Source: Octopus bimaculoides
Taxonomy: Eukaryota
Length of the DNA stretch: 40,199 nt
Assembly: GCF_001194135.2 (NCBI RefSeq)
Contig: NC_068984.1
Span: forward strand, 146,736,912-146,777,110
Direction of reading: 5' to 3'
This document shows, in pieces, positions 11,343-38,436 of the stretch. The notes beneath the pieces are model-generated. The model did not search any database. It saw nothing but the letters and a program-made list of their open reading frames with translations, and was not told the DNA's origin. The position numbers and the translations under genes were made by a program. Each line of letters starts with the position of its first letter. Position 1 is the stretch's first letter.

Positions 11343-11621
11343 TGTGATGAAAACTCACACCATATTTTGCTGGGTATGAAGGAACGTGGCAGATATCCAC
11401 AGCCAGGAAGACTCAGGTGACACTTGTTTTACTGGTCATGCTTCAAAAACCCTGCGAAGAATTCTTGCAGTTCCAAGCAATTCCGATTTTTGTAGGTGTT
11501 CTACCTTCACACTTGCACCAATCTTTTTCAGCCATGTTGGTAGCTGAGTGCTGATACTTCCAAGTGCACCAATTACTATTGGTATCACATCTACTCTCTT
11601 CATTGACCACAACAACTTTTT
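11343..11621 (-). mobile_element. R4/Dong-like (RLE) non-LTR retrotransposon 3' end followed by (TAG)n
   Basis: Minus strand KKLLWSMKRVDVIPIVIGALGSISTQLPTWLKKIGASVKVEHLQKSELLGTARILRRVFEA* (stop at 11436-11438), then 3'UTR, then (TAG)n at ~11273-11342. Confidence 0.85.
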
Positions 11622-11644
11622 ATCCCCACCAAGGGGTTGTCCAC

Positions 11645-12153
11645 TTCACAGAAGACAATATGAGAAATATGAGTAAAAAGATAAGCAGTTGGAAAGCAGC
11701 AGGATCTGATGGTGTTTAGGGATTTCGGATAAAAAAAAATAAAAGAGTTCAGTAGTTGCCATAGATTGATCGCAGAGCAATTTAATGCATTGATTGATGG
11801 AGAAGAAGAAATCCCGGGTTGGTTGAGAAAAGGACGAATAGTGTTCTGTCTGAAGAATGCATCAAAGAGAAATGCTGCTGAAAATTACAGACCAATTTCC
11901 TGCCTCCCATTAATGTGAAAGTTAATGTCAGGAGGAATTGCAGAAGAACTACAAATTTCTTGATAAGAACGATATATTACCGACGGAACAAAAAGGCTGC
12001 AGAAGGAGATGTAGAGGTACCAAAGATCAACTATTGACAGACAAAATGGTTATGCAAGATTGTAAACGAAGGAGATCACATTTGGGAATGGCCTGGATTG
12101 ACTATCGCAAATCTTATGATGTGATTCCACATTCGTGGATCATCGAAGGCTGA
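11645..12153 (+). mobile_element. R4/Dong-like non-LTR reverse transcriptase fragment (N-terminal RT motifs), pseudogenised
   Basis: SWKAAGSDGV*GF...IPGWLRKGRIVF...NYRPISCLPLM*KLMS...[24 protein letters not shown]...[18 protein letters not shown] are typical motifs of RLE-clade RTs. Contains stops and frameshifts. Confidence 0.9.
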
Positions 12154-12154
12154 G

Positions 12155-12216
12155 ATACATTTTTATAATACATTTTTATAATACATTTTTATAATACATT
12201 TTTATAATACATTTTT
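12155..12216. repeat. 13-bp tandem repeat ATACATTTTTATA x ~4.8
   Basis: Units start at 12155, 12168, 12181, 12194 and 12207 (partial). Confidence 0.95.
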
Positions 12217-13098: not shown

Positions 13099-13181
13099 GT
13101 GTCCTACTATGTCTCAAAGGTGTCCTACTATGTCTCAAAGGTGTCCTACTATGTCTCAAAGGTGTCCTACTATGTCTCAAA
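13099..13181. repeat. 21-bp perfect tandem repeat GTGTCCTACTATGTCTCAAAG x4
   Basis: Units start at 13099, 13120, 13141 and 13162 (last unit lacks the final G). Confidence 0.95.
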
Positions 13182-14018: not shown

Positions 14019-14610
14019 NNNNNNNNNNNNNNNNNNNNNNNNNNNNNNNNNNNNNNNNNNNNNNNNNNNNNNNNNNNNNNNNNNNNNNNNNNNNNNNNNN
14101 NNNNNNNNNNNNNNNNNNNNNNNNNNNNNNNNNNNNNNNNNNNNNNNNNNNNNNNNNNNNNNNNNNNNNNNNNNNNNNNNNNNNNNNNNNNNNNNNNNNN
14201 NNNNNNNNNNNNNNNNNNNNNNNNNNNNNNNNNNNNNNNNNNNNNNNNNNNNNNNNNNNNNNNNNNNNNNNNNNNNNNNNNNNNNNNNNNNNNNNNNNNN
14301 NNNNNNNNNNNNNNNNNNNNNNNNNNNNNNNNNNNNNNNNNNNNNNNNNNNNNNNNNNNNNNNNNNNNNNNNNNNNNNNNNNNNNNNNNNNNNNNNNNNN
14401 NNNNNNNNNNNNNNNNNNNNNNNNNNNNNNNNNNNNNNNNNNNNNNNNNNNNNNNNNNNNNNNNNNNNNNNNNNNNNNNNNNNNNNNNNNNNNNNNNNNN
14501 NNNNNNNNNNNNNNNNNNNNNNNNNNNNNNNNNNNNNNNNNNNNNNNNNNNNNNNNNNNNNNNNNNNNNNNNNNNNNNNNNNNNNNNNNNNNNNNNNNNN
14601 NNNNNNNNNN

Positions 14611-15287
14611 CCGTGATATAATTCTTCCAAATTCCTTCTTAATATCATCAATGAATGCTTTCGCAGTATGGAGTAGTCTTTCATGCTCATTACTGTCTTT
14701 TCCATAGAGTTTTACTTTTTCAGTTTGGAATTCTTCTCAGGTTTGTATTTCTTTGTTTTTTTTTTTTCAGAAACGTGCAACTGATTTCAATTGTCTTAGT
14801 AGCTGCGTAAATAATTTCATTTAATTTAGTGAGATCTAGTTTTAGTTCTTGTATAATTTCCTTTGTTACATAGTCTCCAATTTTAATTTGTTTTCTATTT
14901 TGGACTGTATTTGAGAGTTTATGAAGTGATTCTTTATCATGCATATCGGCGCGGCTTACAACTTCAAGCTCATTCAGGATTTTCTGTTTCATTTCTATCA
15001 GACTTTCTATGTTCAGTTAATGTGTAGTCTTCAAATATTGTTTCTTTACCACTTTCCTCGTTATCTTTATCAAGTTCATTACAATTTATATCTCCAGACG
15101 TTTGCGTCTTCTGGTCAGATGGTAGTCCTTCAACTGAGACTCGTGGTGAGTTGCTCCCTTTATCTAGTTCTTCATTTCCTTTCTGTGCTCCGACTTGAAA
15201 ATTAAAAGTTTTGGTTGAAAATTTATTTTTACTGCTATTCGCTGGTGCCTCGGGAAAATAAGTTGACGAAAATACAGTTAGGGTCAT
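14611..15287 (-). mobile_element. Probable N-terminal (pre-RT) region of an R4/Dong-like element, frameshifted, running into a gap
   Basis: MKQKILNELEVV...LHKL...KEIIQELKLDLTKLNEIIYAATKTI followed by a Lys-rich stretch resembles the 'DLT.LN.LIYAAA' pre-RT region of R4-clade ORFs. Confidence 0.45.
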
Positions 15288-18174: not shown

Positions 18175-18335
18175 TCGATGCGTACAAGAAACTCGATTTG
18201 CGACCGCGAAATTTCGGGTTGTATTCAACTGCTCAGCGGCACCTTGGTCAAGCGTCTTCTATGGCTCCGTCCGGGCCAACCAATGGCTTGTGAGTGAATT
18301 TGGTAGCCGGAAACTGTGTCGAAGCTCGTCGTATA
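18175..18335 (+). mobile_element. SINE family A, 5' half
   Basis: GGCACCTTGGTCAAGCGTCTTCT...GGGCCAACCAATGGCTTGTGAGTGAATTTGGTAGCCGGAAACTGTGTCGAAGCTCGTCGTATA, then (CA)n. Confidence 0.7.
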
Positions 18336-18619
18336 CACACACGCGTACACACACACATGCACACACACACAAATGTGTGGTGTGGTGGTGTGTGTTTGTG
18401 TGTGTGTGTGAGTGTGTGTGTGTGTATGTGTGTGCGCGCGCCTGTGTGCCTGACATTTTGTCCACTTTCCCCCAAAAGGTCAAAATTTAACAAAAAAAAA
18501 TGTCTGAGTACTTTTTGTGTTTTCCATTTTAAAATGAAAAAAAAAATCAGCTTAAAAAATTTGTTTTTTTTTCCCACCGATTGTTTGAGAAACGGTGTTG
18601 GTTTGTTTAAAGAAATTAA

Positions 18620-19910: not shown

Positions 19911-20011
<101 letters not shown>

Positions 20012-20162
20012 ATGTGTGTGTATGCGTGTATATATTTATATATACATATGTATATATACACACATACCTGTATATATATATATGTATGTGTAAAACTGCA
20101 TCTCTATATATTTATGCATTTACATACACACATGAGATTATACAATTTTAAGAATATAAATT

Positions 20163-20675: not shown

Positions 20676-21153
20676 NNNNNNNNNNNNNNNNNNNNNNNNN
20701 NNNNNNNNNNNNNNNNNNNNNNNNNNNNNNNNNNNNNNNNNNNNNNNNNNNNNNNNNNNNNNNNNNNNNNNNNNNNNNNNNNNNNNNNNNNNNNNNNNNN
20801 NNNNNNNNNNNNNNNNNNNNNNNNNNNNNNNNNNNNNNNNNNNNNNNNNNNNNNNNNNNNNNNNNNNNNNNNNNNNNNNNNNNNNNNNNNNNNNNNNNNN
20901 NNNNNNNNNNNNNNNNNNNNNNNNNNNNNNNNNNNNNNNNNNNNNNNNNNNNNNNNNNNNNNNNNNNNNNNNNNNNNNNNNNNNNNNNNNNNNNNNNNNN
21001 NNNNNNNNNNNNNNNNNNNNNNNNNNNNNNNNNNNNNNNNNNNNNATATATATATAGTAATGGGGATGCAAACAGGAAAGATTAAATGCAAAATAATATT
21101 ATTTATTATTAACAATATTATTAATATTGAGCAGACGCAACAGAGTGACTCAT

Positions 21154-21217: not shown

Positions 21218-21401
21218 TCCTAAACATTTATATATTTATATTAAATTTTTGTTTTTATGTTCAGTTATAATAAAAAGAATTTACAATTATTTGATGCGTT
21301 AGTCTATACTTTTATAGAGTACAAATGTATTTTTATACAAGAATGCTGTTGACAATGACTTCGAAGGCGCAGTTAAGGCATATATATGTATGTGTGTGTA
21401 T

Positions 21402-22010
21402 AAGAACCCACAGTATAGTAGAAGCCATAGCCGCTCACAATAAAAAGGAGTACTGGTTGAATGTCCCAGTGAAGACCTCAATAAAATGTAAGCACAACAA
21501 ACCTGATATAATGGTTTGGGATAGAGAAGAGAAACTGTGTATAGTTGTGGAAATTAGCTGCCCAACAGATGTTAACGTAAAGCTGAAGATCAGTGAAAAA
21601 GAAAATACCTATGCTGAACTATTGAGAAATCTGAAGTTACTCCATCCAGATTACAAGTTCAGATTTGTACCTGTAATTATTGGGGGAAATGCCTAAATAT
21701 CAATCTTGAGAAAATAGGCTCTCAAAACCAGAAAGGAGAAAGCTAATTCGAAGACTACAGATCCAATCCATCACTGGAACTGTAAAAATCTGTAAAATTT
21801 TCCAGAAGTTTATCATTTAAATATATATGAGCTTGTCTAGATATGTAACTATATGCATGAGACTACATACATAAAACAAAACATACAAATCTGCACATGC
21901 ACTGACTCCAAATACTGCACTTAAACACACATGCATGCACAAATTCCAATGTAGGATCCTTGGGTCTAGGTTAGAAATCGGCTCTTTCTCTATTGACAAA
22001 AAAAATCTTG
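21402..22010 (+). mobile_element. RLE-type non-LTR retrotransposon 3' end (restriction-like endonuclease domain + 3'UTR)
   Basis: HNKPDIMVWDREEKLCIVVEISCPTDVNVKLKISEKENTYAELLRNL...FVPVIIGG shows the PD..D/E-x-K catalytic motif. After a frameshift it continues LIRRLQIQSITGTVKICKIFQKFII* (stop 21818-21820). The C-terminus differs from the copies at 6051 and 11343, so this is a different family. Confidence 0.85.
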
Positions 22011-22586
22011 AAATGTAATTAAATAATGAAATAGAAATCCTAAAGATATTGTTGGGAGATGGAAAGAGCAGTCACTCGCTAGATCCACCGAAGATCATGA
22101 GAAAGCTTAGGAAGCATGAACCAGTAGAAAATGAAGGATTATTGATTTTTACGTGTGTGATTTNNNNNNNNNNNNNNNNNNNNNNNNNNNNNNNNNNNNN
22201 NNNNNNNNNNNNNNNNNNNNNNNNNNNNNNNNNNNNNNNNNNNNNNNNNNNNNNNNNNNNNNNNNNNNNNNNNNNNNNNNNNNNNNNNNNNNNNNNNNNN
22301 NNNNNNNNNNNNNNNNNNNNNNNNNNNNNNNNNNNNNNNNNNNNNNNNNNNNNNNNNNNNNNNNNNNNNNNNNNNNNNNNNNNNNNNNNNNNNNNNNNNN
22401 NNNNNNNNNNNNNNNNNNNNNNNNNNNNNNNNNNNNNNNNNNNNNNNNNNNNNNNNNNNNNNNNNNNNNNNNNNNNNNNNNNNNNNNNNNNNNNNNNNNN
22501 NNNNNNNNNNNNNNNNNNNNNNNNNNNNNNNNNNNNNNNNNNNNNNNNNNNNNNNNNNNNNNNNNNNNNNNNNNNNNNNNNNNNNN

Positions 22587-23890: not shown

Positions 23891-26333
23891 ACAGGATTGT
23901 TGCATTTGCATCCAAACCTTTCAGTCTCCAGAGCAAGGTTCGATCTCCTGACCCTGTGTTAAGCAACATCTTCTTTAATCAATCTGTCATTCACGCTTTT
24001 CTATTTTTTTTCATCTTTTCTTTTCTAGAATTTCCTCCTTTGCCCTTCTTCCCCCTCTCTCCTCCTCTTTCTCTCTCCCCCTCTCTCTCCCCACTCTCTC
24101 CCTCTCTCTCTCTCTCCCTCTCTCTCCCTCTCTCTCTCCCTCTCTCTCTCCCTCCCTCCCCCCTCTCTCTCTCCTTCCTGCCAGTAGGTGTGTGTGCGTG
24201 TATGTGTGTTCGTGTGTGTGTGTGATGTTTGTATGTAGATATACATATACATTCACATACACACGCACATGTATATATTTGTTTGCGTCGTAAGTGTGCT
24301 TGCGCCTGCGCAGACGGGCTTAGGTAAGAAGCGTAAAAGACAGAGAGAGAGAGAGAGAAAGAGAGAAAGAGAGAGAGAGAAGGGGAGAGAGAACAGCAAT
24401 ACTTAGAATGGGAAAGCGACGATAGAATTTTACACATAATTCAACTCAGATTAAACAAATTGCAATAAATCATCACCATCACCATCATCATCACCATCAC
24501 CATCGTCTTCATCATCATCATCATCATCATCATCTCGTCCTATACCATTGCTTTATTCTTTTTTCCTCTCCTTCTCTTTCCCCTCGTTTTCTATTCCTTC
24601 AGAAAATGTCATTGTTCCTGTGTCTGGAATGTTTCCAGAATGTTTTTTTTTTTTACCACGCACATGGAACAATGTTTCAAATAAACACTCTATCCCCCCC
24701 ACCACCTCTCTCTCTCTCTCTCTCTCTCATAGTGTTATCTGTATCTTTCTCTTCTGAGATTATCTACACTCGTACATATATATATATATATATATATATA
24801 NNNNNNNNNNNNNNNNNNNNNNNNNNNNNNNNNNNNNNNNNNNNNNNNNNNNNNNNNNNNNNNNNNNNNNNNNNNNNNNNNNNNNNNNNNNNNNNNNNNN
24901 NNNNNNNNNNNNNNNNNNNNNNNNNNNNNNNNNNNNNNNNNNNNNNNNNNNNNNNNNNNNNNNNNNNNNNNNNNNNNNNNNNNNNNNNNNNNNNNNNNNN
25001 NNNNNNNNNNNNNNNNNNNNNNNNNNNNNNNNNNNNNNNNNNNNNNNNNNNNNNNNNNNNNNNNNNNNNNNNNNNNNNNNNNNNNNNNNNNNNNNNNNNN
25101 NNNNNNNNNNNNNNNNNNNNNNNNNNNNNNNNNNNNNNNNNNNNNNNNNNNNNNNNNNNNNNNNNNNNNNNNNNNNNNNNNNNNNNNNNNNNNNNNNNNN
25201 NNNNNNNNNNNNNNNNNNNNNNNNNNNNNNNNNNNNNNNNNNNNNNNNNNNNNNNNNNNNNNNNNNNNNNNNNNNNNNNNNNNNNNNNNNNNNNNNNNNN
25301 NNNNNNNNNNNNNNNNNNNNNNNNNNNNNNNNNNNNNNNNNNNNNNNNNNNNNNNNNNNNNNNNNNNNNNNNNNNNNNNNNNNNNNNNNNNNNNNNNNNN
25401 NNNNNNNNNNNNNNNNNNNNNNNNNNNNNNNNNNNNNNNNNNNNNNNNNNNNNNNNNNNNNNNNNNNNNNNNNNNNNNNNNNNNNNNNNNNNNNNNNNNN
25501 NNNNNNNNNNNNNNNNNNNNNNNNNNNNNNNNNNNNNNNNNNNNNNNNNNNNNNNNNNNNNNNNNNNNNNNNNNNNNNNNNNNNNNNNNNNNNNNNNNNN
25601 NNNNNNNNNNNNNNNNNNNNNNNNNNNNNNNNNNNNNNNNNNNNNNNNNNNNNNNNNNNNNNNNNNNNNNNNNNNNNNNNNNNNNNNNNNNNNNNNNNNN
25701 NNNNNNNNNNNNNNNNNNNNNNNNNNNNNNNNNNNNNNNNNNNNNNNNNNNNNNNNNNNNNNNNNNNNCATAGCAGGCGTTCTCTCACTGGAGCACAGCA
25801 ATCTTTCGAACTTCTGTATCTACCTTAGAAGCTTTGTTCTTTGTTCGTGATGCTGACATCATAAAAATTTAGAAACTTCTAAAGAACGTTAAATGAAAGA
25901 ATTCATTTTTGAAACGGTGAATCTCAAAGTAGATAAATCTATAAATAATATTATGTACCTTCTGGGTTACGAAAAACCCCTTTGGATAGAAAAAGTCGAA
26001 AGCTGATTGTCGGACTGGAACCCTCATCTGAAACGTTCTCTTGAGGTTTCTAAATTCTTATGGCGTCAATACTATGCATTTCTCGCTTTTAAGAGCAGAG
26101 TTTCAAATAATTTGAAGACTTTCTTGGGTCGAATTGTTGGACTCATGTCATGTTTGTGCAGCTTTTGGTATTTTCTATCCAATGTTTTTTAATCGTTAAT
26201 TCGATAATTACTCGTCGTATTATTTTCACGTTCTCTTGATTTTCTGAAATAGAGAATCGCTGGGTAGAAATGGATAGAAGAAAGTAGATCAATGCCTTTT
26301 GAACTGAACTAAGTAGACTCAAGTAGAGCTGAG

Positions 26334-28496: not shown

Positions 28497-28811
28497 NNNN
28501 NNNNNNNNNNNNNNNNNNNNNNNNNNNNNNNNNNNNNNNNNNNNNNNNNNNNNNNNNNNNNNNNNNNNNNNNNNNNNNNNNNNNNNNNNNNNNNNNNNNN
28601 NNNNNNNNNNNNNNNNNNNNNNNNNNNNNNNNNNNNNNNNNNNNNNNNNNNNNNNNNNNNNNNNNNNNNNNNNNNNNNNNNNNNNNNNNNNNNNNNNNNN
28701 NNNNNNNNNNNNNNNNNNNNNNNNNNNNNNNNNNNNNNNNNNNNNNNNNNNNNNNNNNNNNNNNNNNNNNNNNNNNNNNNNNNNNNNNNNNNNNNNNNNN
28801 NNNNNNNNNNN

Positions 28812-30540: not shown

Positions 30541-31622
30541 CGTTTCGTTTATTTTCCACATCACCAGGTTCCGGATCCATTCCAAATGATACGAGCAGAA
30601 TAACGCGAACTGGAATACACATGCAGTTCTAAATACGGGTCATTTGTAGAGCAGTAACAGTTTGAAATTACACCGTCTATATCGAATTGGTAGTATGTAT
30701 GTGTGTGTATGTATGTGTGTATGTATGTTTACATATGAACCTACTTCTTGGTAACAAACGCAAATGAGGGCAGTAATTCCAGATTCTTCCCTCATTCACC
30801 AAATATAGCAGAAGAGGTTTCATGTAGTGAAAGTGTAGCAGAGCGAACGACGGTGCCCCAACATGGTCGCAGCTCTTGAGCTGAAAATAATATAGGATAA
30901 AGAATATATATATATATATGTATGTATGTATTTGTGTGTGTGTGTGTGTGATTTGTTAATCAGTTCGTTATAGTTGCAGTAAGTTATGGAAATAAGATGT
31001 GCCGCAAAATACAGTGAGCCACATTGAATGACATTCTTTTTTAAAATCATTTTGTATGGAACAATGAGAATCTTTAATGCAATATTCATAATATAGACTT
31101 AGTCTTGCAGCATTTCTTTGTATCGGCCCCGTCTCAAGTGTAATTGTTGAGAAGGTCGCCTGCGTGCGTCAATAGCTTTTCGCTTTGTAGCTCTTTCTAT
31201 TGATGCTTTTACCACTGAGATTCTCTAATCTTGCCTGTTAATGTTATCCAGCTGAGTGGCTTTACAGTAAAATGTTGTTTAATCAATCAAAGCCATAAGC
31301 CACTTAAAGCGGGTTTTGTTACCAGCACAATTGGTCTTGTCACCAACTGTTATAGAAGTATTATTGTGTAAAAATGCAGCTTTGTATTCAAATGCATATC
31401 GCCATTCTCTCAAATATGATAACACAATCGCTTTTGTATATAAATAATAAATAAATGATGCATCTAAGATTCTGATTGGTCAATGAAGGAGATAAGAACT
31501 GAAACATTCCATTGAATTCATCTAAGAGCCTTGCTAGACATTCTATGATATACATTAATACACATATACATACGCACAAACATATGTATATGTGTGCATG
31601 TGTGTGTGTATATATACACGTC

Positions 31623-31654
<32 letters not shown>

Positions 31655-31744
31655 CTGTAACTTGCCTGTTGAGGCGCCGATTTAGCTGAATAACTAAAAT
31701 AACTAATAGCTAATATATATGCATATCTTTTATGGTATATATTT

Positions 31745-31917
31745 TACTTTTTTCAGTCATTGTACTGAGGCCATGCTGGGGCACCGCCTTGAAAGGTTTC
31801 GTCGAACAAATAGACCCCATTACGTTGTTTTTTTTAAAAATTTGGTACGTATTCTTTCGTTGTCTTTTGTTGAACGGCTAAGTTAAGAGAAAATAAACAA
31901 AGACCGATTGTCAAACG
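31745..31917 (-). mobile_element. SINE family A, 3' half
   Basis: Reverse complement ...GGGGTCTATTTGTTCGACG...TTCAAGGCGGTGCCCCAGCATGGCCTCAGTACAATGACTGAAAAAAGTAAAA. Confidence 0.7.
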
Positions 31918-32114: not shown

Positions 32115-32569
32115 AAACACACACACATATATAGAGTTATTAATTGCGGATTAATAATGCGGTCAAAACACTTCTTCAGGTTTTTGCTGATACAAATAAA
32201 CCGGGTTAACAAAAGGTTTAGTGATTGGCATTGAGCTCCAGGTAATCCTAAGGCGAGATTCGAAGACAAAGTCCATCACCTGTCGACTTTGTAAATCCAT
32301 GGTTGCATTACCAAATTAATGTTATTTTTCCACGGACTGATTTACAAGAATAACGGGCATAAATAGTAGGCTTCATACATTATTTCTGCATTATAGACAC
32401 AAATATTCTATATATAAAGTTGACAGGAGATCCGGCTGTTATGACGCGACTGGCTGTGTTTCACTGAAAGCTCAAAAACCACTTCGAAATCGCGTAATCC
32501 GGCAGTTCCGGCGCCCGTAGCGGATACAGATACTGCTGCTGTGACCATAAATTATCTTTTAGATTAGGC

Positions 32570-32870
32570 ACAGGCATGGCTGTGAGGTTCCGGGTTCAGT
32601 CTTGGGCAGGTACCTTCTACTAAAGTCTCGAGAATGGATTTGGAAAACAGGAACTGAAAGCAGTGTGTCTCTGTGGCAGTGTCTGTCCCACATTTGGTGT
32701 TGGTGTGTTTACATCCTCGTAATTTAGCGGTTCGGAAATGAAGACCGATAGCATAAGTACCAGGCTTTACAAATAAGAGCAGGGGTCTATTCATATGACT
32801 AACAATTCTTCAAGGTGGTGCCCCAGCATGACCGTAGTCTAATGACTGAAACAAGTAAAAGAATAAAAGA
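32570..32870 (+). mobile_element. SINE family A, internally deleted
   Basis: GGCATGGCTGTGAGGTTCCGGGTTCAGTC...GGAACTGAAAGCAG...TAATTTAGCGGTTCGG...TTCAAGGTGGTGCCCCAGCATGACCGTAGTCTAATGACTGAAACAAGTAAAAGAATAAAAGAA. Confidence 0.8.
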
Positions 32871-32938
32871 ATATATATATATATATATGTAAAACATACA
32901 ATATATAATATACTATAATATACACACGCACACACACA

Positions 32939-32982
<44 letters not shown>

Positions 32983-33036
32983 AATTTAATGTACACAGCA
33001 TAAAGACATATGCTACTAATAGACTAATAGTATATG

Positions 33037-33443
33037 TTTTGTTTATGCGCTTATTAGTCGCAGGATGTCGCCCAGGAAAATTCCCTTTAAGTCGTCGAGT
33101 GTTAAGAGATCACTGAAATGCTGAAACCAAGTGGCACCAGTAATGTTTGCATTATTAGAGCTGCTTCTAATTCAAAAGTTAATCTTGTTTTACTTGTGCG
33201 GTGTTGTTGCACATCAGCACATACACCTCAGACCAGTGAGATCGAATTCATTTTCAAGTCACTCCGTTAGACAATGCTGATGAGCTGAAATAGCGGCGAA
33301 ATATCGATATCCACTGATCTCGTTCATCTACAGAGCAAATAATTTCGCCTGGTTTTGAAGTATTCAGTGTTTTCTTTAACACTCTACTTTTAAAGGGACT
33401 TGCCCAGGATGATAGCCCGCAGCTAATAACGGCATAAACAAAA
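33037..33443. mobile_element. ~407-bp fold-back element with ~110-nt imperfect inverted arms enclosing a hammerhead ribozyme motif
   Basis: Colinear complementary blocks: 33037-48/33432-43 (12 bp), 33051-57/33423-29, 33082-90/33390-98, 33097-105/33376-84, 33111-17/33363-69, 33124-29/33350-55, 33146-50/33335-39. Confidence 0.75.
33272..33316 (+). ncRNA. Minimal type I hammerhead ribozyme motif (palindromic stem III, dimer type)
   Basis: Stem I CAATG (33272-76)/CACTG (33312-16), 4 of 5 pairs. Core CTGATGA (33277-83). Stem II GCTG-AAATAG-CGGC (33284-97). GAAA (33298-301). Stem III is the perfect palindrome ATATCGATAT (33301-10). Cleavage triplet AUC ends at C33311. Confidence 0.75.
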
Positions 33444-33455
33444 TTCATACATACA

Positions 33456-33497
<42 letters not shown>

Positions 33498-33719
33498 GCA
33501 CATACATATATCACATATATATATACACATATATACACATACATATATACAAATATATACACTACATATATACTCATACATATGTACATATACACATACA
33601 TACATATATGCATATATACTTATATATACATATGTATATATACATACATACAAATATATTTATATGCAGACAGAAAGATATAGATGGATAAATATATAGA
33701 TAGATAGGTAAATAGATAG

Positions 33720-33763
<44 letters not shown>

Positions 33764-34249
33764 AGGAGGCGTTAGATCGGCAAAGAGCAGAGATGCAGGG
33801 AGGTGGAGGAAGAGACAAAGTAAGAAAGAGAGAGAGAAAAAGGGAGGGGGTGTGGGGACTGCAGACATTTAATGGAATATCTCGAGGAAAGCAATATGCC
33901 TGAAGCCGGTGTAAGAAGAAAGAGAGAGAGAGGCGTTCGAAAGAACAGAGGAAACGAGAGACGATAATGGCCGCGAGAGAAAGAATGGGAGAAAGGCAAC
34001 AACGAAAGACTGATATGGCTGAATGGGATTGGGGAAAATACCACCGTATTATTCAGTGATGTGTCTATGTGTGTGTGTGTCTATGTGTGTGTGTTTCTAG
34101 CACTGGCTGGTTATCAATCACTCTTTGTCTTACTTCACGTTTATTATTTCCTCTTGTCTCTTCAACCACGCAACTATTTTGACTCTCTTCTACCTCACTC
34201 TTCTTTCTCCCGTTTTATATATGTGTGTGTGTGTGTGTGTATGTATTTG

Positions 34250-34281
<32 letters not shown>

Positions 34282-34369
34282 TAAAGAAACACATGTGGGT
34301 GTTTGTATGCATTTGTATACATGCATGTGCGAGCATGCGCGTGTATGTGTATGAGCATATATTTATGCA

Positions 34370-34420
<51 letters not shown>

Positions 34421-35305
34421 ATATATATATATAAAAGTTATGAAGGGTAATGGAGTCAACCAGACCCGAATGATACAGGTAATACCAAGTAAGTGCTGTA
34501 TACCGACTAGTTTTGCCCCAGAGGTGGTTGCAACATGAATGGGGAATATAACATGGGTCGTGTATTAGCGTGTGTATATATAAAAAAGAATGAGATAAAG
34601 ATAAAGAGACCAATGGCATAAATAAATTTATATTTTATGTATATGTATATATANNNNNNNNNNNNNNNNNNNNNNNNNNNNNNNNNNNNNNNNNNNNNNN
34701 NNNNNNNNNNNNNNNNNNNNNNNNNNNNNNNNNNNNNNNNNNNNNNNNNNNNNNNNNNNNNNNNNNNNNNNNNNNNNNNNNNNNNNNNNNNNNNNNNNNN
34801 NNNNNNNNNNNNNNNNNNNNNNNNNNNNNNNNNNNNNNNNNNNNNNNNNNNNNNNNNNNNNNNNNNNNNNNNNNNNNNNNNNNNNNNNNNNNNNNNNNNN
34901 NNNNNNNNNNNNNNNNNNNNNNNNNNNNNNNNNNNNNNNNNNNNNNNNNNNNNNNNNNNNNNNNNNNNNNNNNNNNNNNNNNNNNNNNNNNNNNNNNNNN
35001 NNNNNNNNNNNNNNNNNNNNNNNNNNNNNNNNNNNNNNNNNNNNNNNNNNNNNNNNNNNNNNNNNNNNNNNNNNNNNNNNNNNNNNNNNNNNNNNNNNNN
35101 NNNNNNNNNNNNNNNNNNNNNNNNNNNNNNNNNNNNNNNNNNNNNNNNNNNNNNNNNNNNNNNNNNNNNNNNNNNNNNNNNNNNNNNNNNNNNNNNNNNN
35201 NNNNNNNNNNNNNNNNNNNNNNNNNNNNNNNNNNNNNNNNNNGTAGATGGTGGGTGTGTGGGGTGTCATTTGGAATGGATGAAGGGAAATCTGAAAGGTG
35301 TGTGC

Positions 35306-36885: not shown

Positions 36886-37004
36886 GTGTGTCCTGCTGAT
36901 ATGGCGAATTATGTTTTTCTTTCTATGAAATAATGGTTTTCAACAAAAACACGACACTTGTGACTTCCAAACTCTCCAGATTGAAATCCAATGGATTATT
37001 AATG

Positions 37005-37175
37005 TTTGAAGCGTTTTCGAAAAGGGAGACAAATCGACAGCCTCAAGACACTCTAGCTTCGCAAGAGGCCGCCATTGTCCAGGGGATGTCTAAAATGAAT
37101 AAGGACCATTTAGAGCAGAATTATCCACGATTCTGGTGCCGCATTGAAACAGTCATCGAAGGTGAAGGCGGATTC
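37005..37175 (+). mobile_element. Tc1/mariner (maT-like) transposase C-terminal remnant, second family
   Basis: AFSKRETNRQPQDTLASQEAAIVQGMSKMNKDHLEQNYPRFWCRIETVIEGEGGF matches the pattern ERETN..PHNT..SL.AAI......MNKDHL..AC.RF..RIE.VI.AEGGF. No TIR visible. Confidence 0.7.
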
Positions 37176-38436
37176 CCTAGGCACAAAGGACTGACATTGG
37201 GTGAAGTGATAAGTTTGTCAATTAAAACGAACTTGGTTGGTATTTTGTTCTATCAAACTCGGACAAAATGCCATGTAATATTTAATTACGACTCTTTATA
37301 TTCTAACTTCCCTTTCGTCTTTCTCAGATCGACTAAATAGATATCAGTCGATTTAATCAAATATTGAATTAATATAATCCAGTACTTAGATCGATACAGT
37401 CGAATATGCGACTCTTCCTCTCCTCAACATTTGGCTTTGCGCCGATGTTAGAAACCGTTATTATTAGCAATGTAATGTCACTGAAAACTGTGTTTTCTTA
37501 TACCATATTCCTGGCAAATAATTTTAATCCTCACCCCTCTTCCACCCTGCCAGACATTCCATATTTTCAGGTGTCGTCTGTCTTAACTAAATAACATATT
37601 AGATTTAAAGCAAAATTCGTTTTGATTACTCAGAAAACTAGCGCTGACAAATATCATCTCAGCAGATCGAATTAGCTTTGAAGAGTTTGAAAACAAGCTT
37701 CTTCTCTTCTTTGATTCTTTCAATCTTCTCGCGTTGTAGTCTGTTGCTATCCAAGTTTTGAAGTTGGAATATAGAAGATATTATATTAATGTCTGGTTAA
37801 AATATATTTTGTTATACAATATTGTTGACTTGGCAGAAAGTATTACTTAAATCAACATTTAGTTTCGAATTCACTCAATCCTGTATATCAATCCTCGTTT
37901 ATCACTGCTTCATTTATCACTAATCTTTGATAACATGATACGTTCATTGTGAACCTTTTACGTTTATCATGAATTGATCTGAGACAAGACTGGTTGGAGA
38001 TCAGTCAAAGATTCTGCTTGGACAGTAAGAGCCCACCCCAGCGACCATCCACGCCACTCACAACAACGAAATCTATTTTTCCTGTAGGCTCTATTATTCA
38101 TTTATTACTGAATAATTTCATTCAATCACTCATACCATGAGAAACGAAGACGGATTTACTGCTCGTGTTGTGCGTGTGATCCAGCGCAAAACAAGACAAG
38201 CTCCAGAATTGTATTTCTTAATTGTTATCGAGCAAACGCTGTAGACAAGGCGGGGTGGAGGTGGCGGATGTGCTTACGACCAGCAAGCGATGGCATAAAG
38301 CGGAAAAACAGTCTAACTTCGTTCTCATAAGATTGAGGGAAAGTCATGAACATCACGATGTCTCATTTGACCATATATACAGCAACACAGTTTTCCACCA
38401 CCATTCGAAAAGAAACCAATATTTTAAAGACATCGG

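What the first reader, a model, noticed from the sequence alone, without database searches (positions are those of the whole stretch)
33272..33316. Near-intact minimal hammerhead ribozyme with a self-complementary stem III
Seen: every hammerhead element is present in the correct order on the + strand. These are CUGAUGA, a 4-bp stem II closed by G-C (one G-U), GAAA, the 10-nt perfect palindrome AUAUCGAUAU as stem III, an NUH triplet (AUC, predicted cut after 33311) and stem I with 4 of 5 pairs. Established: minimal type I hammerheads with palindromic stem III are typical of Penelope-like elements and cleave as dimers; type I hammerheads also define animal non-LTR retrozymes. Inference: this locus encodes, or recently encoded, a self-cleaving RNA. 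No PLE coding sequence is adjacent, so it would be a non-autonomous unit.
Basis: partly seen in the sequence, partly recalled or inferred. Interest (0 to 1): 0.85.

Follow-up and report, generated by a model that had tools for sequence, protein, structure and literature searches.

The report
Decayed hammerhead ribozyme relic in retroelement fragment
A complete hammerhead self-cleaving RNA motif really is present and is too good to be chance, but it looks like an old, weakened leftover of a Penelope-like/retrozyme mobile element in an invertebrate genome, which is an ordinary kind of finding.

Summary
My descriptor finds only this site in the window. Chance expectation is about 6.5e-4 per window, or 1.6e-5 if the palindrome is required.

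Rfam does not call it: the best match is Hammerhead_HH9 at 17.6 bits against a threshold of 52. The hammerhead fold is also strongly disfavoured, at +1.3 kcal/mol against an MFE of -12.6.

The motif lies in a 417-bp non-coding unit (33035-33451). The outer ~95 nt of this unit are inverted repeats, 78% identical (K2P 0.26), and the unit is flanked by (AC)n and (AT)n microsatellites. This matches published Penelope-like element insertions: a 5'-truncated copy, an adjacent inverted truncated copy, microsatellite targets, and a hammerhead near the 3' end.

There is no RT/GIY-YIG ORF, no tandem partner and no second copy in the window. No relatives could be retrieved, so covariation is untested.

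Most likely this is an old, probably inactive type-I hammerhead relic of the Penelope-like/retrozyme lineage. It is a new member of a known kind and of low interest.

The parts
32922..32974 (.). (AC)n microsatellite on the left flank. An AT-rich stretch (32875-32924) lies before it and about 60 nt of AT-rich sequence follow it, up to the unit.
   Evidence: TRF; sequence
33035..33129 (-). Left arm of the inverted repeat. I read it as an inverted, heavily 5'-truncated copy of the element's 3'-terminal ~95 nt.
   Evidence: Self-BLAST minus-strand hit, E=1e-15; local alignment 33035-33129 vs 33451-33350, 78% identity over 91 aligned nt; MAFFT
33130..33264 (+). Unique inner segment upstream of the hammerhead. 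It has no ORF, no tRNA-like part and no Pfam domain.
33265..33322 (+). Full extent of the hammerhead-like domain as aligned to Rfam HH9. It includes distal helix I pairs C33265-G33322 and G33266-C33321 and an internal loop UUAG/UCU.
   Evidence: cmscan alignment, 17.6 bits
33272..33276 (+). Helix I, 5' strand (CAAUG). With A33271 it forms the nominal 6-position helix.
33277..33283 (+). Catalytic core box C3-A9 (CUGAUGA)
33284..33297 (+). Helix II hairpin: GCUG / CGGC (G10.1-C11.1 closing pair, one G.U), loop AAAUAG
33298..33301 (+). Core box G12 A13 A14 A15.1 (GAAA)
33301..33310 (+). Helix III, AUAUCGAUAU. In a monomer it forms 3 A-U pairs plus the tetraloop UCGA. Between two copies it forms a 10-bp duplex.
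33311..33311 (+). C17. The predicted cleavage lies between 33311 and 33312.
   Evidence: Position in the motif. This is inferred, not assayed.
33312..33316 (+). Helix I, 3' strand (CACUG)
33350..33451 (+). Right arm of the inverted repeat. I read it as the 3'-terminal part of the + strand copy. The predicted cut site lies about 140 nt upstream of this end.
33459..33665 (.). (AT)n-rich microsatellite on the right flank
   Evidence: TRF

Best explanation
The locus is an old relic of a metazoan type-I hammerhead ribozyme. It was carried by a retroelement of the Penelope-like element (PLE) / non-LTR retrozyme lineage.

Proposed history (inferred): a PLE-type reverse transcriptase-endonuclease cut an AT/AC-rich microsatellite and primed reverse transcription from the 3' end of the element RNA on both DNA strands. 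This left a 5'-truncated + strand copy of about 310 bp (33141-33451), which includes the hammerhead about 140 nt from its 3' end. It also left a shorter inverted copy of about 95-105 bp (33035-33140) abutting it head to head. Hence the terminal inverted repeats and the missing ORF.

Since then both arms have diverged (K2P 0.26). The hammerhead has kept all core nucleotides but carries two mismatches in helix I and one G.U in helix II.

If the locus is transcribed, cleavage would fall after C33311. Helix III is only three A-U pairs, so cleavage would need pairing of the palindrome with a second copy. No neighbouring copy exists, and a competing helix sequesters the 3' strand of helix II. The most likely present state is therefore inactive or barely active.

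Shown here: the motif, its non-randomness, the inverted-repeat and microsatellite context, the absence of an ORF or tandem partner, and the unfavourable fold. Inferred: the retroelement origin, the integration mechanism and the loss of activity.
For: - Motif: complete and unique in the window.
- Chance: expectation is 6.5e-4 per window, or 1.6e-5 with the palindromic helix III. That is about 1-50 chance sites in a genome of about 2.7 Gb. Invertebrate genomes with these elements carry thousands of copies: about 5000 in mussel and more than 6000 in a coral (PMC7229834).
- Rfam: the best match is a hammerhead family (HH9, E=0.081 locally). The alignment extends to a distal helix I and an internal loop.
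- Architecture: it matches the 'canonical metazoan type I' description, with helix I of 6 bp, helix II of 4 bp, a short helix III with a palindromic loop, and G10.1-C11.1 (PMC4209133). Invertebrate helix III is typically 2 bp plus a tetraloop (PMC7229834).
- Context: the 417-bp unit is 40% GC, with inverted outer arms, flanked by (AC)n and (AT)n.
- Literature on PLE insertions: they are 5'-truncated, often have an adjacent inverted 5'-truncated copy that creates inverted repeats, favour (TA)n/(CA)n microsatellites, and carry the hammerhead near the 3' end (PMC8557442). The Anolis PLE cleaves and extends both strands at AT-rich DNA. Its hammerhead cut site is at +26 and reverse transcription starts at +111-118, plus a 30-40 bp tail (PMC11167929). 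That geometry is comparable to the 140 nt seen here.
- Retrozymes: they derive from PLE pLTRs and also occur as solo monomers (bioRxiv 10.64898/2026.07.22.740005).
- Age and decay: arm divergence K2P 0.26; hammerhead fold +1.3 vs MFE -12.6 kcal/mol; double-hammerhead -13.7 vs -31.8 kcal/mol.
Against: - No homologous copy could be retrieved. The window has none. A six-frame protein search gave nothing. Metagenome and viral scans gave nothing. The one hit in the prokaryote-genome scan is a chance match. So there is no covariation, no family consensus and no demonstrated link to any PLE.
- No RT or GIY-YIG remnant lies within about 3 kb.
- The Rfam score is far below the gathering threshold.
- The hammerhead is of the canonical type, not the min-HHR usually seen in metazoan PLE pLTRs (PMC4209133).
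- Terminal inverted repeats of about 95 nt are also what a MITE or foldback DNA element looks like.
- The source organism was not identified with the tools, so the prior abundance of hammerheads in this genome is unknown.
Confidence: 0.6

Rival explanations
1. Chance motif. The 417-bp unit is a MITE or foldback-type DNA element, or two unrelated repeats in inverted orientation. The hammerhead-like string in its unique core arose by chance and never made a ribozyme.
For: - About 95-nt terminal inverted repeats bound a short non-coding unit.
- The hammerhead fold is essentially absent from the predicted ensemble, and local folding z-scores are about 0.
- Rfam scores it 17.6 bits against a threshold of 52.
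- Helix I is imperfect.
- A looser descriptor gives 0.16 chance hits per window, so weak look-alikes are common.
- If many windows were screened, a hit expected at 1e-4 to 1e-3 per window will turn up.
Against: - The strict descriptor expectation is 6.5e-4 per window, or 1.6e-5 including the palindromic helix III that real metazoan hammerheads have.
- No target-site duplication is recognisable.
- Microsatellite flanks together with outward-facing inverted 3' ends are typical of PLE insertions (PMC8557442).
- The similarity to HH9 extends outside the descriptor, into the distal helix I and internal loop.
Confidence: 0.22
2. Still-functional ribozyme. The locus is a live solo retrozyme-like or domesticated hammerhead. 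It self-cleaves after C33311 in vivo, either helped by proteins or by pairing its palindrome in trans with transcripts of other copies.
For: - All 15 core positions, G10.1-C11.1 and the AUC triplet are intact despite about 13% divergence per arm. The chance of this under neutrality is roughly 0.1; this is my estimate.
- The 10-nt perfect palindrome is preserved.
- Metazoan hammerheads with weak helix III cleave as dimers, and the Anolis PLE hammerhead appears to be protein-assisted (PMC4209133, PMC7229834, PMC11167929).
- The unit RNA is highly self-paired (z = -7.6), like retrozyme RNAs.
Against: - There is no tandem or nearby second hammerhead.
- Helix I has two mismatches in six positions.
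- The competing helix 33264-33269/33291-33296 wins by about 14 kcal/mol in the monomer. The double-hammerhead is 18 kcal/mol above the dimer MFE.
- Single min- or weak-helix-III motifs show little or no cleavage in vitro (PMC4209133, PMC7229834).
- There is no evidence of transcription.
Confidence: 0.12
3. Rod-shaped RNA gene. The whole 417-nt unit encodes a long hairpin or rod RNA, for example a precursor of small RNAs or a viroid-like or retrozyme-like circle. In this reading the inverted arms are selected as RNA structure rather than being two DNA copies.
For: The predicted fold is a long imperfect hairpin of -142.5 kcal/mol with z = -7.6. The unit size and GC content (417 nt, 40%) fall near the retrozyme range (PMC7229834).
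Against: - Only the outer ~95 nt pair. The inner ~220 nt, including the hammerhead, do not form a rod.
- Any inverted DNA duplication gives the same z-score.
- No tandem repeat is present to release a circle.
- There are no homologues with which to test compensatory change.
Confidence: 0.05

Closest known systems
Canonical metazoan type-I hammerheads of non-LTR retrozymes and satellite transcripts (newt satellite 2, Schistosoma Sm-alpha, coral, mussel and axolotl retrozymes)
   Same: Type-I topology and an intact 15-nt core. Helix II of 4 bp with a 6-nt loop, a nominal 6-position helix I, and a very short helix III capped by a palindromic tetraloop, which implies dimeric action. The host unit is AT-rich, a few hundred bp long, and its RNA is strongly self-paired (PMC4209133, PMC7229834).
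   Different: There is no tandem repetition; it is a single copy in 40 kb. Helix I has two mismatches. The loop nucleotides do not match the conserved loop1-loop2 contacts well enough for Rfam (17.6 bits). The unit ends in inverted rather than direct repeats.
Hammerheads in pseudo-LTRs of Penelope-like elements (min-HHRs; Cervera & de la Pena 2014)
   Same: G10.1-C11.1 and palindromic 15.2-16.2/loop 3. Most genomic copies are solitary and lie in truncated elements. The insertion architecture has an adjacent inverted truncated copy and microsatellite targets, and the hammerhead lies 100-150 nt from the 3' end (PMC4209133, PMC8557442, PMC11167929).
   Different: [quoted passage not shown] Here helix II is 4 bp, with no bulge and a real helix III. 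No RT/GIY-YIG ORF and no direct pLTR are nearby.
Rfam Hammerhead_HH9 (RF02275), the intronic hammerhead of amniotes
   Same: It is the best-scoring Rfam family. The alignment covers the core, helix II, helix III, helix I and the distal CG pairs, with CGUUA matching the consensus.
   Different: The score is 17.6 bits against a gathering score of 52. The host genome is not amniote-like: it is microsatellite-rich, about 37% GC, and carries invertebrate-type LINE fragments. It is not a member.
MITE / foldback DNA transposons
   Same: A short non-coding unit bounded by about 95-nt imperfect inverted repeats.
   Different: No recognisable target-site duplication and no second copy in the window. Known MITEs are not defined by a hammerhead.

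Membership tests
Hammerhead ribozyme (type I) | Conserved core: C3 U4 G5 A6 N7 G8 A9, G12 A13 A14, A15.1-U16.1, and H17 not G | tested here: met
   CUGAUGA 33277-33283, GAAA 33298-33301, A33301-U33310, C33311
Hammerhead ribozyme (type I) | Three helices around the core in type-I order, with helix I open and helices II and III closed | tested here: met
   Helix II has 4 bp including one G.U. Helix III has 3 A-U pairs plus the loop UCGA. Helix I has 4/5 pairs (4/6), plus 2 distal pairs. All three helices are weak.
Hammerhead ribozyme (type I) | Reaches the curated Rfam gathering score of a hammerhead family | tested here: not met
   No hit at gathering thresholds. The best is HH9 at 17.6 bits against 52.
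Hammerhead ribozyme (type I) | The hammerhead secondary structure is thermodynamically accessible | tested here: not met
   +1.3 kcal/mol vs MFE -12.6; ensemble fraction about 2e-9; double-hammerhead -13.7 vs -31.8. Nearest-neighbour models ignore tertiary contacts and proteins, so this lowers the chance of activity but does not exclude it.
Hammerhead ribozyme (type I) | Covariation in helices I-III among homologues | not testable with these tools
   No homologue was retrievable.
Hammerhead ribozyme (type I) | Site-specific Mg2+-dependent self-cleavage | not testable with these tools
   Needs an in vitro transcription assay.
Non-LTR retrozyme | Tandem repeats of about 150-450 bp, each with a type-I hammerhead (at least 2 hammerheads) | tested here: not met
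   TRF shows no such repeat. Self-BLAST shows no direct copy. There is one hammerhead in the window.
Non-LTR retrozyme | Canonical type-I hammerhead in an AT-rich, highly self-paired unit of a few hundred nt | tested here: met
   417 bp, 40% GC; fold z = -7.6. The pairing comes only from the terminal arms.
Penelope-like element | ORF with an RT domain and a GIY-YIG endonuclease | tested here: not met
   No such fragment appears among stop-to-stop ORFs of the window. Ten flanking fragments gave no Pfam hit. A 589-N gap at 34654-35242 could hide sequence.
Penelope-like element | Insertion architecture: 5'-truncated copy with an adjacent inverted 5'-truncated copy, giving inverted repeats, in a microsatellite or AT-rich target | tested here: met
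   Arms 33035-33129 / 33451-33350, 78% identical; (AC)n and (AT)n flanks. Criteria are from PMC8557442 and PMC11167929. This is compatible with a PLE but not specific to one.
Penelope-like element | Sequence homology to a known PLE pseudo-LTR | not testable with these tools
   No repeat library and no copy of the source genome were available.
MITE | Terminal inverted repeats plus target-site duplication, in a multi-copy family | tested here: inconclusive
   Inverted repeats are present. No target-site duplication is recognisable in the AT-rich flanks. Copy number is unknown.

The most novel reading that the evidence does not exclude
The 417-bp inverted-repeat unit belongs to an undescribed invertebrate (possibly cephalopod) family of hammerhead-bearing hairpin retroelements. 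In this reading the units are solo, retrozyme-like and mobilised by PLE enzymes. Their RNA folds into a long hairpin and self-cleaves by pairing the AUAUCGAUAU palindrome in trans, rather than through tandem copies.
Probability: 0.07. Interest if true: 0.55.

Novelty: new member of a known kind. Interest (0 to 1): 0.25.

Why it matters
If the reading is right, this is one more dispersed, decaying hammerhead of the Penelope-like/retrozyme lineage. It has modest value as a marker that the source genome once hosted hammerhead-bearing retroelements. From my recollection of its SINE-like repeats, the source may be an octopod. I found no paper specifically describing hammerheads in cephalopods. The locus also shows on a small scale the 'inverted truncated copy plus microsatellite target' signature of PLE integration. 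It would matter more only if a genome-wide search revealed a conserved, transcribed family built on this unit.

Tried and rejected
1. Rfam at gathering thresholds over the whole window gave nothing. Rfam at E<=10 over the whole window gave 281 hits, essentially all microRNA-family models landing on (TG)n/(TA)n microsatellites, which are artefacts.
2. A second hammerhead on the minus strand. The reverse complement of 33158-33215 starts GCUGAUGUGC but lacks A9 and GAAA, and MAFFT does not align it with the + strand motif. Rejected.
3. Alternative register. Helix III could close at U33363 with H33364 and helix I 3' strand CAGUG 33365-33369, leaving a 55-nt loop. It is weaker, so I did not adopt it.
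4. Paralogue and homologue hunts.
 - Self-BLAST found only the inverted arm.
 - A six-frame concatenated protein query of the unit gave no hits.
 - Exact-ORF look-ups gave none.
 - DNA patterns found nothing in metagenomes or viral contigs.
 - One hit in a Lewinellaceae MAG has no helix II. About 0.6 chance hits are expected there, so it is chance.
5. Organism identification.
 - LINE and Tc1-like fragments hit RVT_1 proteins at 60% identity or less; named hits include Penaeus indicus, Paramuricea and Amphimedon.
 - SINE-like peptides gave no hits.
 - A literature search for the SINE strings found nothing.
 - The octopod attribution rests on my memory only.
6. tRNA-like part of a SINE: none.
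7. PLE ORF: none. The six-frame Pfam call failed on stop codons, so I used stop-free fragments instead.
8. The long 'inverted repeats' I1-I22 are runs of N, not sequence.

Full report
**What is in the sequence.** The window is a draft eukaryotic scaffold. It has 16 runs of N totalling 4,905 bases, about 37% GC, and more than 100 microsatellite or minisatellite arrays. It also holds fragments of LINE reverse transcriptases and a Tc1-like transposase.

- CAAUG (helix I, 5' strand)
- CUGAUGA (core)
- GCUG-AAAUAG-CGGC (helix II hairpin)
- GAAA (core; the last A starts the palindrome)
- AUAUCGAUAU (palindrome, helix III)
- C (C17), then the predicted cut
- CACUG (helix I, 3' strand)

Helix II has the canonical G10.1-C11.1 pair and one G.U. 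Helix I has 4 of 5 pairs, or 4 of 6 if A33271/A33317 are counted. In a monomer helix III can form only three A-U pairs around a UCGA loop.

**Is it more than chance?**
- A descriptor with the same tolerance finds this site and no other on either strand. The tolerance was CUGANGA; a 4-bp helix II with G-C closure; GAAA; helix III of at least 3 bp; UH; and at least 4/5 pairs in helix I.
- It found none in 400 dinucleotide shuffles and none in 30 Mb of first-order Markov sequence.
- The window contains 16 CUGANGA cores. Planting the core in flanks sampled from the window gives 4.7e-4 to 6.5e-4 expected sites per window. This drops to 8.8e-5 for a helix III as compact as observed and to 1.6e-5 for a fully palindromic one.
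- Scaled to a genome of about 2.7 Gb, that is roughly 50, 7 and 1 chance sites.
- Much looser criteria give 0.16 hits per window. It is the quality of this particular site that matters.

**Rfam.** Nothing is reported at the curated thresholds. In a 301-nt search the best match is Hammerhead_HH9 at 17.6 bits (gathering score 52, E=0.081), aligned over 33265-33322. The alignment adds two distal helix I pairs and an internal loop UUAG/UCU, where the family has UUAC/UAC. Rescaled to one family over the whole window, that E-value is about 3e-3. By Rfam's standard it is not a member of any curated hammerhead family.

**Would it fold and cut?**
- The predicted MFE of 33262-33325 is not the hammerhead. 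CCGUUA (33264-33269) pairs with UAGCGG (33291-96) and removes the 3' strand of helix II. Folding z-scores of the local segments are -0.55 to +0.63.
- The hammerhead secondary structure evaluates to +1.3 kcal/mol against -12.6 for the MFE. That is about 2e-9 of the ensemble.
- The double-hammerhead is the form in which the palindromes of two copies make a 10-bp helix III. It evaluates to -13.7 kcal/mol against -31.8 for the dimer MFE.
- These models ignore tertiary contacts and proteins. Even so, published single motifs with a weak helix III cleave poorly or not at all (PMC4209133, PMC7229834).
- There is no second hammerhead, tandem repeat or direct copy nearby to supply a partner.

**Surroundings.** The motif sits inside a 417-bp, 40%-GC non-coding unit (33035-33451).
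- The outer ~95 nt of the unit are inverted repeats. Self-BLAST gives a minus-strand hit with E=1e-15. Local alignment of 33035-33129 against 33451-33350 gives 78% identity and K2P 0.26.
- The inner ~220 nt, including the hammerhead, are unique.
- The unit RNA would fold as a long hairpin (z = -7.6), but only through these arms.
- The unit is flanked by (AC)n on the left and a long (AT)n-rich array on the right.
- No target-site duplication can be recognised.
- There is no tRNA-like part and no Pfam domain in ten flanking ORF fragments. The window's stop-to-stop ORFs contain no RT or GIY-YIG remnant other than LINE fragments far away.

**Interpretation.** The published description of canonical metazoan type-I hammerheads fits this motif better than the 'minimal' PLE variant does.
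- Canonical: helix I of 6 bp, helix II of 4 bp, helix III of 1-2 bp capped by a small palindromic loop, acting as dimers.
- Minimal PLE variant: long helix II, a bulged nucleotide after A9, and no helix III (PMC4209133).

Canonical type-I hammerheads define non-LTR retrozymes. Their units are 170-400 nt (350-390 bp in mussel), AT-rich and highly self-paired (PMC7229834). Retrozymes are now argued to be non-autonomous derivatives of PLE pseudo-LTRs, and they also occur as solo monomers (bioRxiv 10.64898/2026.07.22.740005).

PLE-type insertions have these published features:
- They are typically 5'-truncated.
- They often have an inverted 5'-truncated copy immediately adjacent, which creates inverted repeats.
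- They favour (TA)n/(CA)n microsatellites.
- They carry the hammerhead near the 3' end (PMC8557442).
- The purified Anolis PLE cleaves and extends both DNA strands at AT-rich sites. Its hammerhead cut site is at +26, and reverse transcription starts at +111-118, with an optional 30-40 bp tail (PMC11167929).

All of this reproduces what is seen here. Two copies have their 3' ends facing outward into microsatellites. The longer copy reaches back far enough to include a hammerhead whose cut site is about 140 nt from its 3' end. The shorter copy is too short to include one.

The 26% divergence between the arms dates the event as old. Under that much decay, an intact 15-nt core is a roughly 1-in-10 outcome (my estimate), and two helix I mismatches are expected.

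I therefore read the locus as an old, probably inactive hammerhead relic of the PLE/retrozyme lineage (confidence 0.6).

**Rivals.**
- A chance motif inside a MITE-like or foldback element (0.22). This is favoured by the inverted repeats, the sub-threshold Rfam score and the poor fold. It is disfavoured by the chance statistics, the palindromic helix III and the microsatellite flanks.
- A still-active hammerhead working in trans or with protein help (0.12).
- A selected rod-shaped RNA gene (0.05).

None can be excluded, because no related copy could be obtained:
- A six-frame protein search of the unit gave nothing.
- Exact-ORF look-ups gave nothing.
- DNA pattern scans of metagenomes and viral contigs gave nothing.
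- The single match in prokaryote genomes is a chance hit without helix II.

Covariation, family consensus, linkage to PLE ORFs, transcription and cleavage all remain untested.

**Source organism.** The tools did not identify it. The LINE fragments match RVT_1 proteins of marine invertebrates at 60% identity or less. A SINE-like repeat present several times (for example 32560-32870) resembles, from my memory only, the abundant SINE of Octopus genomes. Searches meant to confirm this found nothing. Cephalopods are reported to carry only ancient PLE (Naiad) remnants (PMC8557442). I found no paper specifically describing cephalopod hammerheads.

**Verdict.** This is a new member of a known kind, ordinary in significance, and worth only a quick genome-wide check.

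Noticed in passing
window 32560-32870; also about 8870-9060, 3320-3440, 30790-30960, 31700-31880: Several diverged copies, in both orientations, of a SINE-like repeat containing ...GTTTACATCCTCGTAATTTAGCGGTTCGG... and ...CCAGCATGACCGTAGTCTAATGACTGAAACAAGTAAAAGA. From memory it resembles the abundant Octopus SINE. Copies often end next to microsatellites.
   Followed up: partly
window 11439-12150, 14723-15016, 21295-21693: Broken fragments of a non-LTR (LINE) retrotransposon on both strands. The concatenated translations hit PF00078 (RVT_1) proteins with E down to 1.9e-75 at 60% identity or less. Named hits come from Penaeus indicus, Paramuricea clavata and Amphimedon.
   Followed up: partly
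window 36900-37337 (+): A 146-aa open fragment ending ...RFWCRIETVIEGEGGFPRH. By eye it looks like the C-terminus of a Tc1/mariner transposase, but it has no Pfam hit.
   Followed up: partly
window 13099-13181, 12155-12216, 6938-7016: Perfect (100% match) minisatellites: 21 bp x 4 (GTGTCCTACTATGTCTCAAAG), 13 bp x 4.8, and 33 bp x 2.4.
   Followed up: no
whole window, e.g. 18333-18427, 34217-34285, 19996-20064: At E<=10, Rfam reports 281 sub-threshold matches. Nearly all are mir-297/466/3149-type models landing on (TG)n/(TA)n microsatellites. These are low-complexity artefacts, not microRNA genes.
   Followed up: yes
window 4031-4796, 9145-9574, 14019-14610, 20676-21045, 22164-22586, 24801-25768, 28497-28811, 34654-35242 and 8 shorter runs: Sixteen assembly gaps make up 12% of the window. 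The long 'inverted repeats' and many 'ORFs' reported by the mechanical tools are runs of N/X. The 589-N gap 1.2 kb downstream of the unit could hide relevant sequence.
   Followed up: yes
window 33360-33369: An alternative 3' half for the same hammerhead core. U33363/U33364 could serve as U16.1/H17, and CAGUG 33365-33369 as the helix I 3' strand (also 4/5 pairs), giving a 55-nt helix III loop.
   Followed up: partly
window 33113-33126 vs 33277-33290; minus strand of 33206-33215: Short echoes of the core: CTGAAATGCTGAAA in the left arm resembles CTGATGAGCTGAAA (79%), and GCTGATGTGC lies on the minus strand. Neither forms a hammerhead, so both are probably chance.
   Followed up: yes
L001 1731-1769 (-), Lewinellaceae MAG JAHELJ010000039.1: The only exact match to CTGATGAG-N(10-18)-CGAAATATCGATAT in 596 Gb of prokaryote genomes. 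It has no helix II. About 0.6 such matches are expected by chance.
   Followed up: yes
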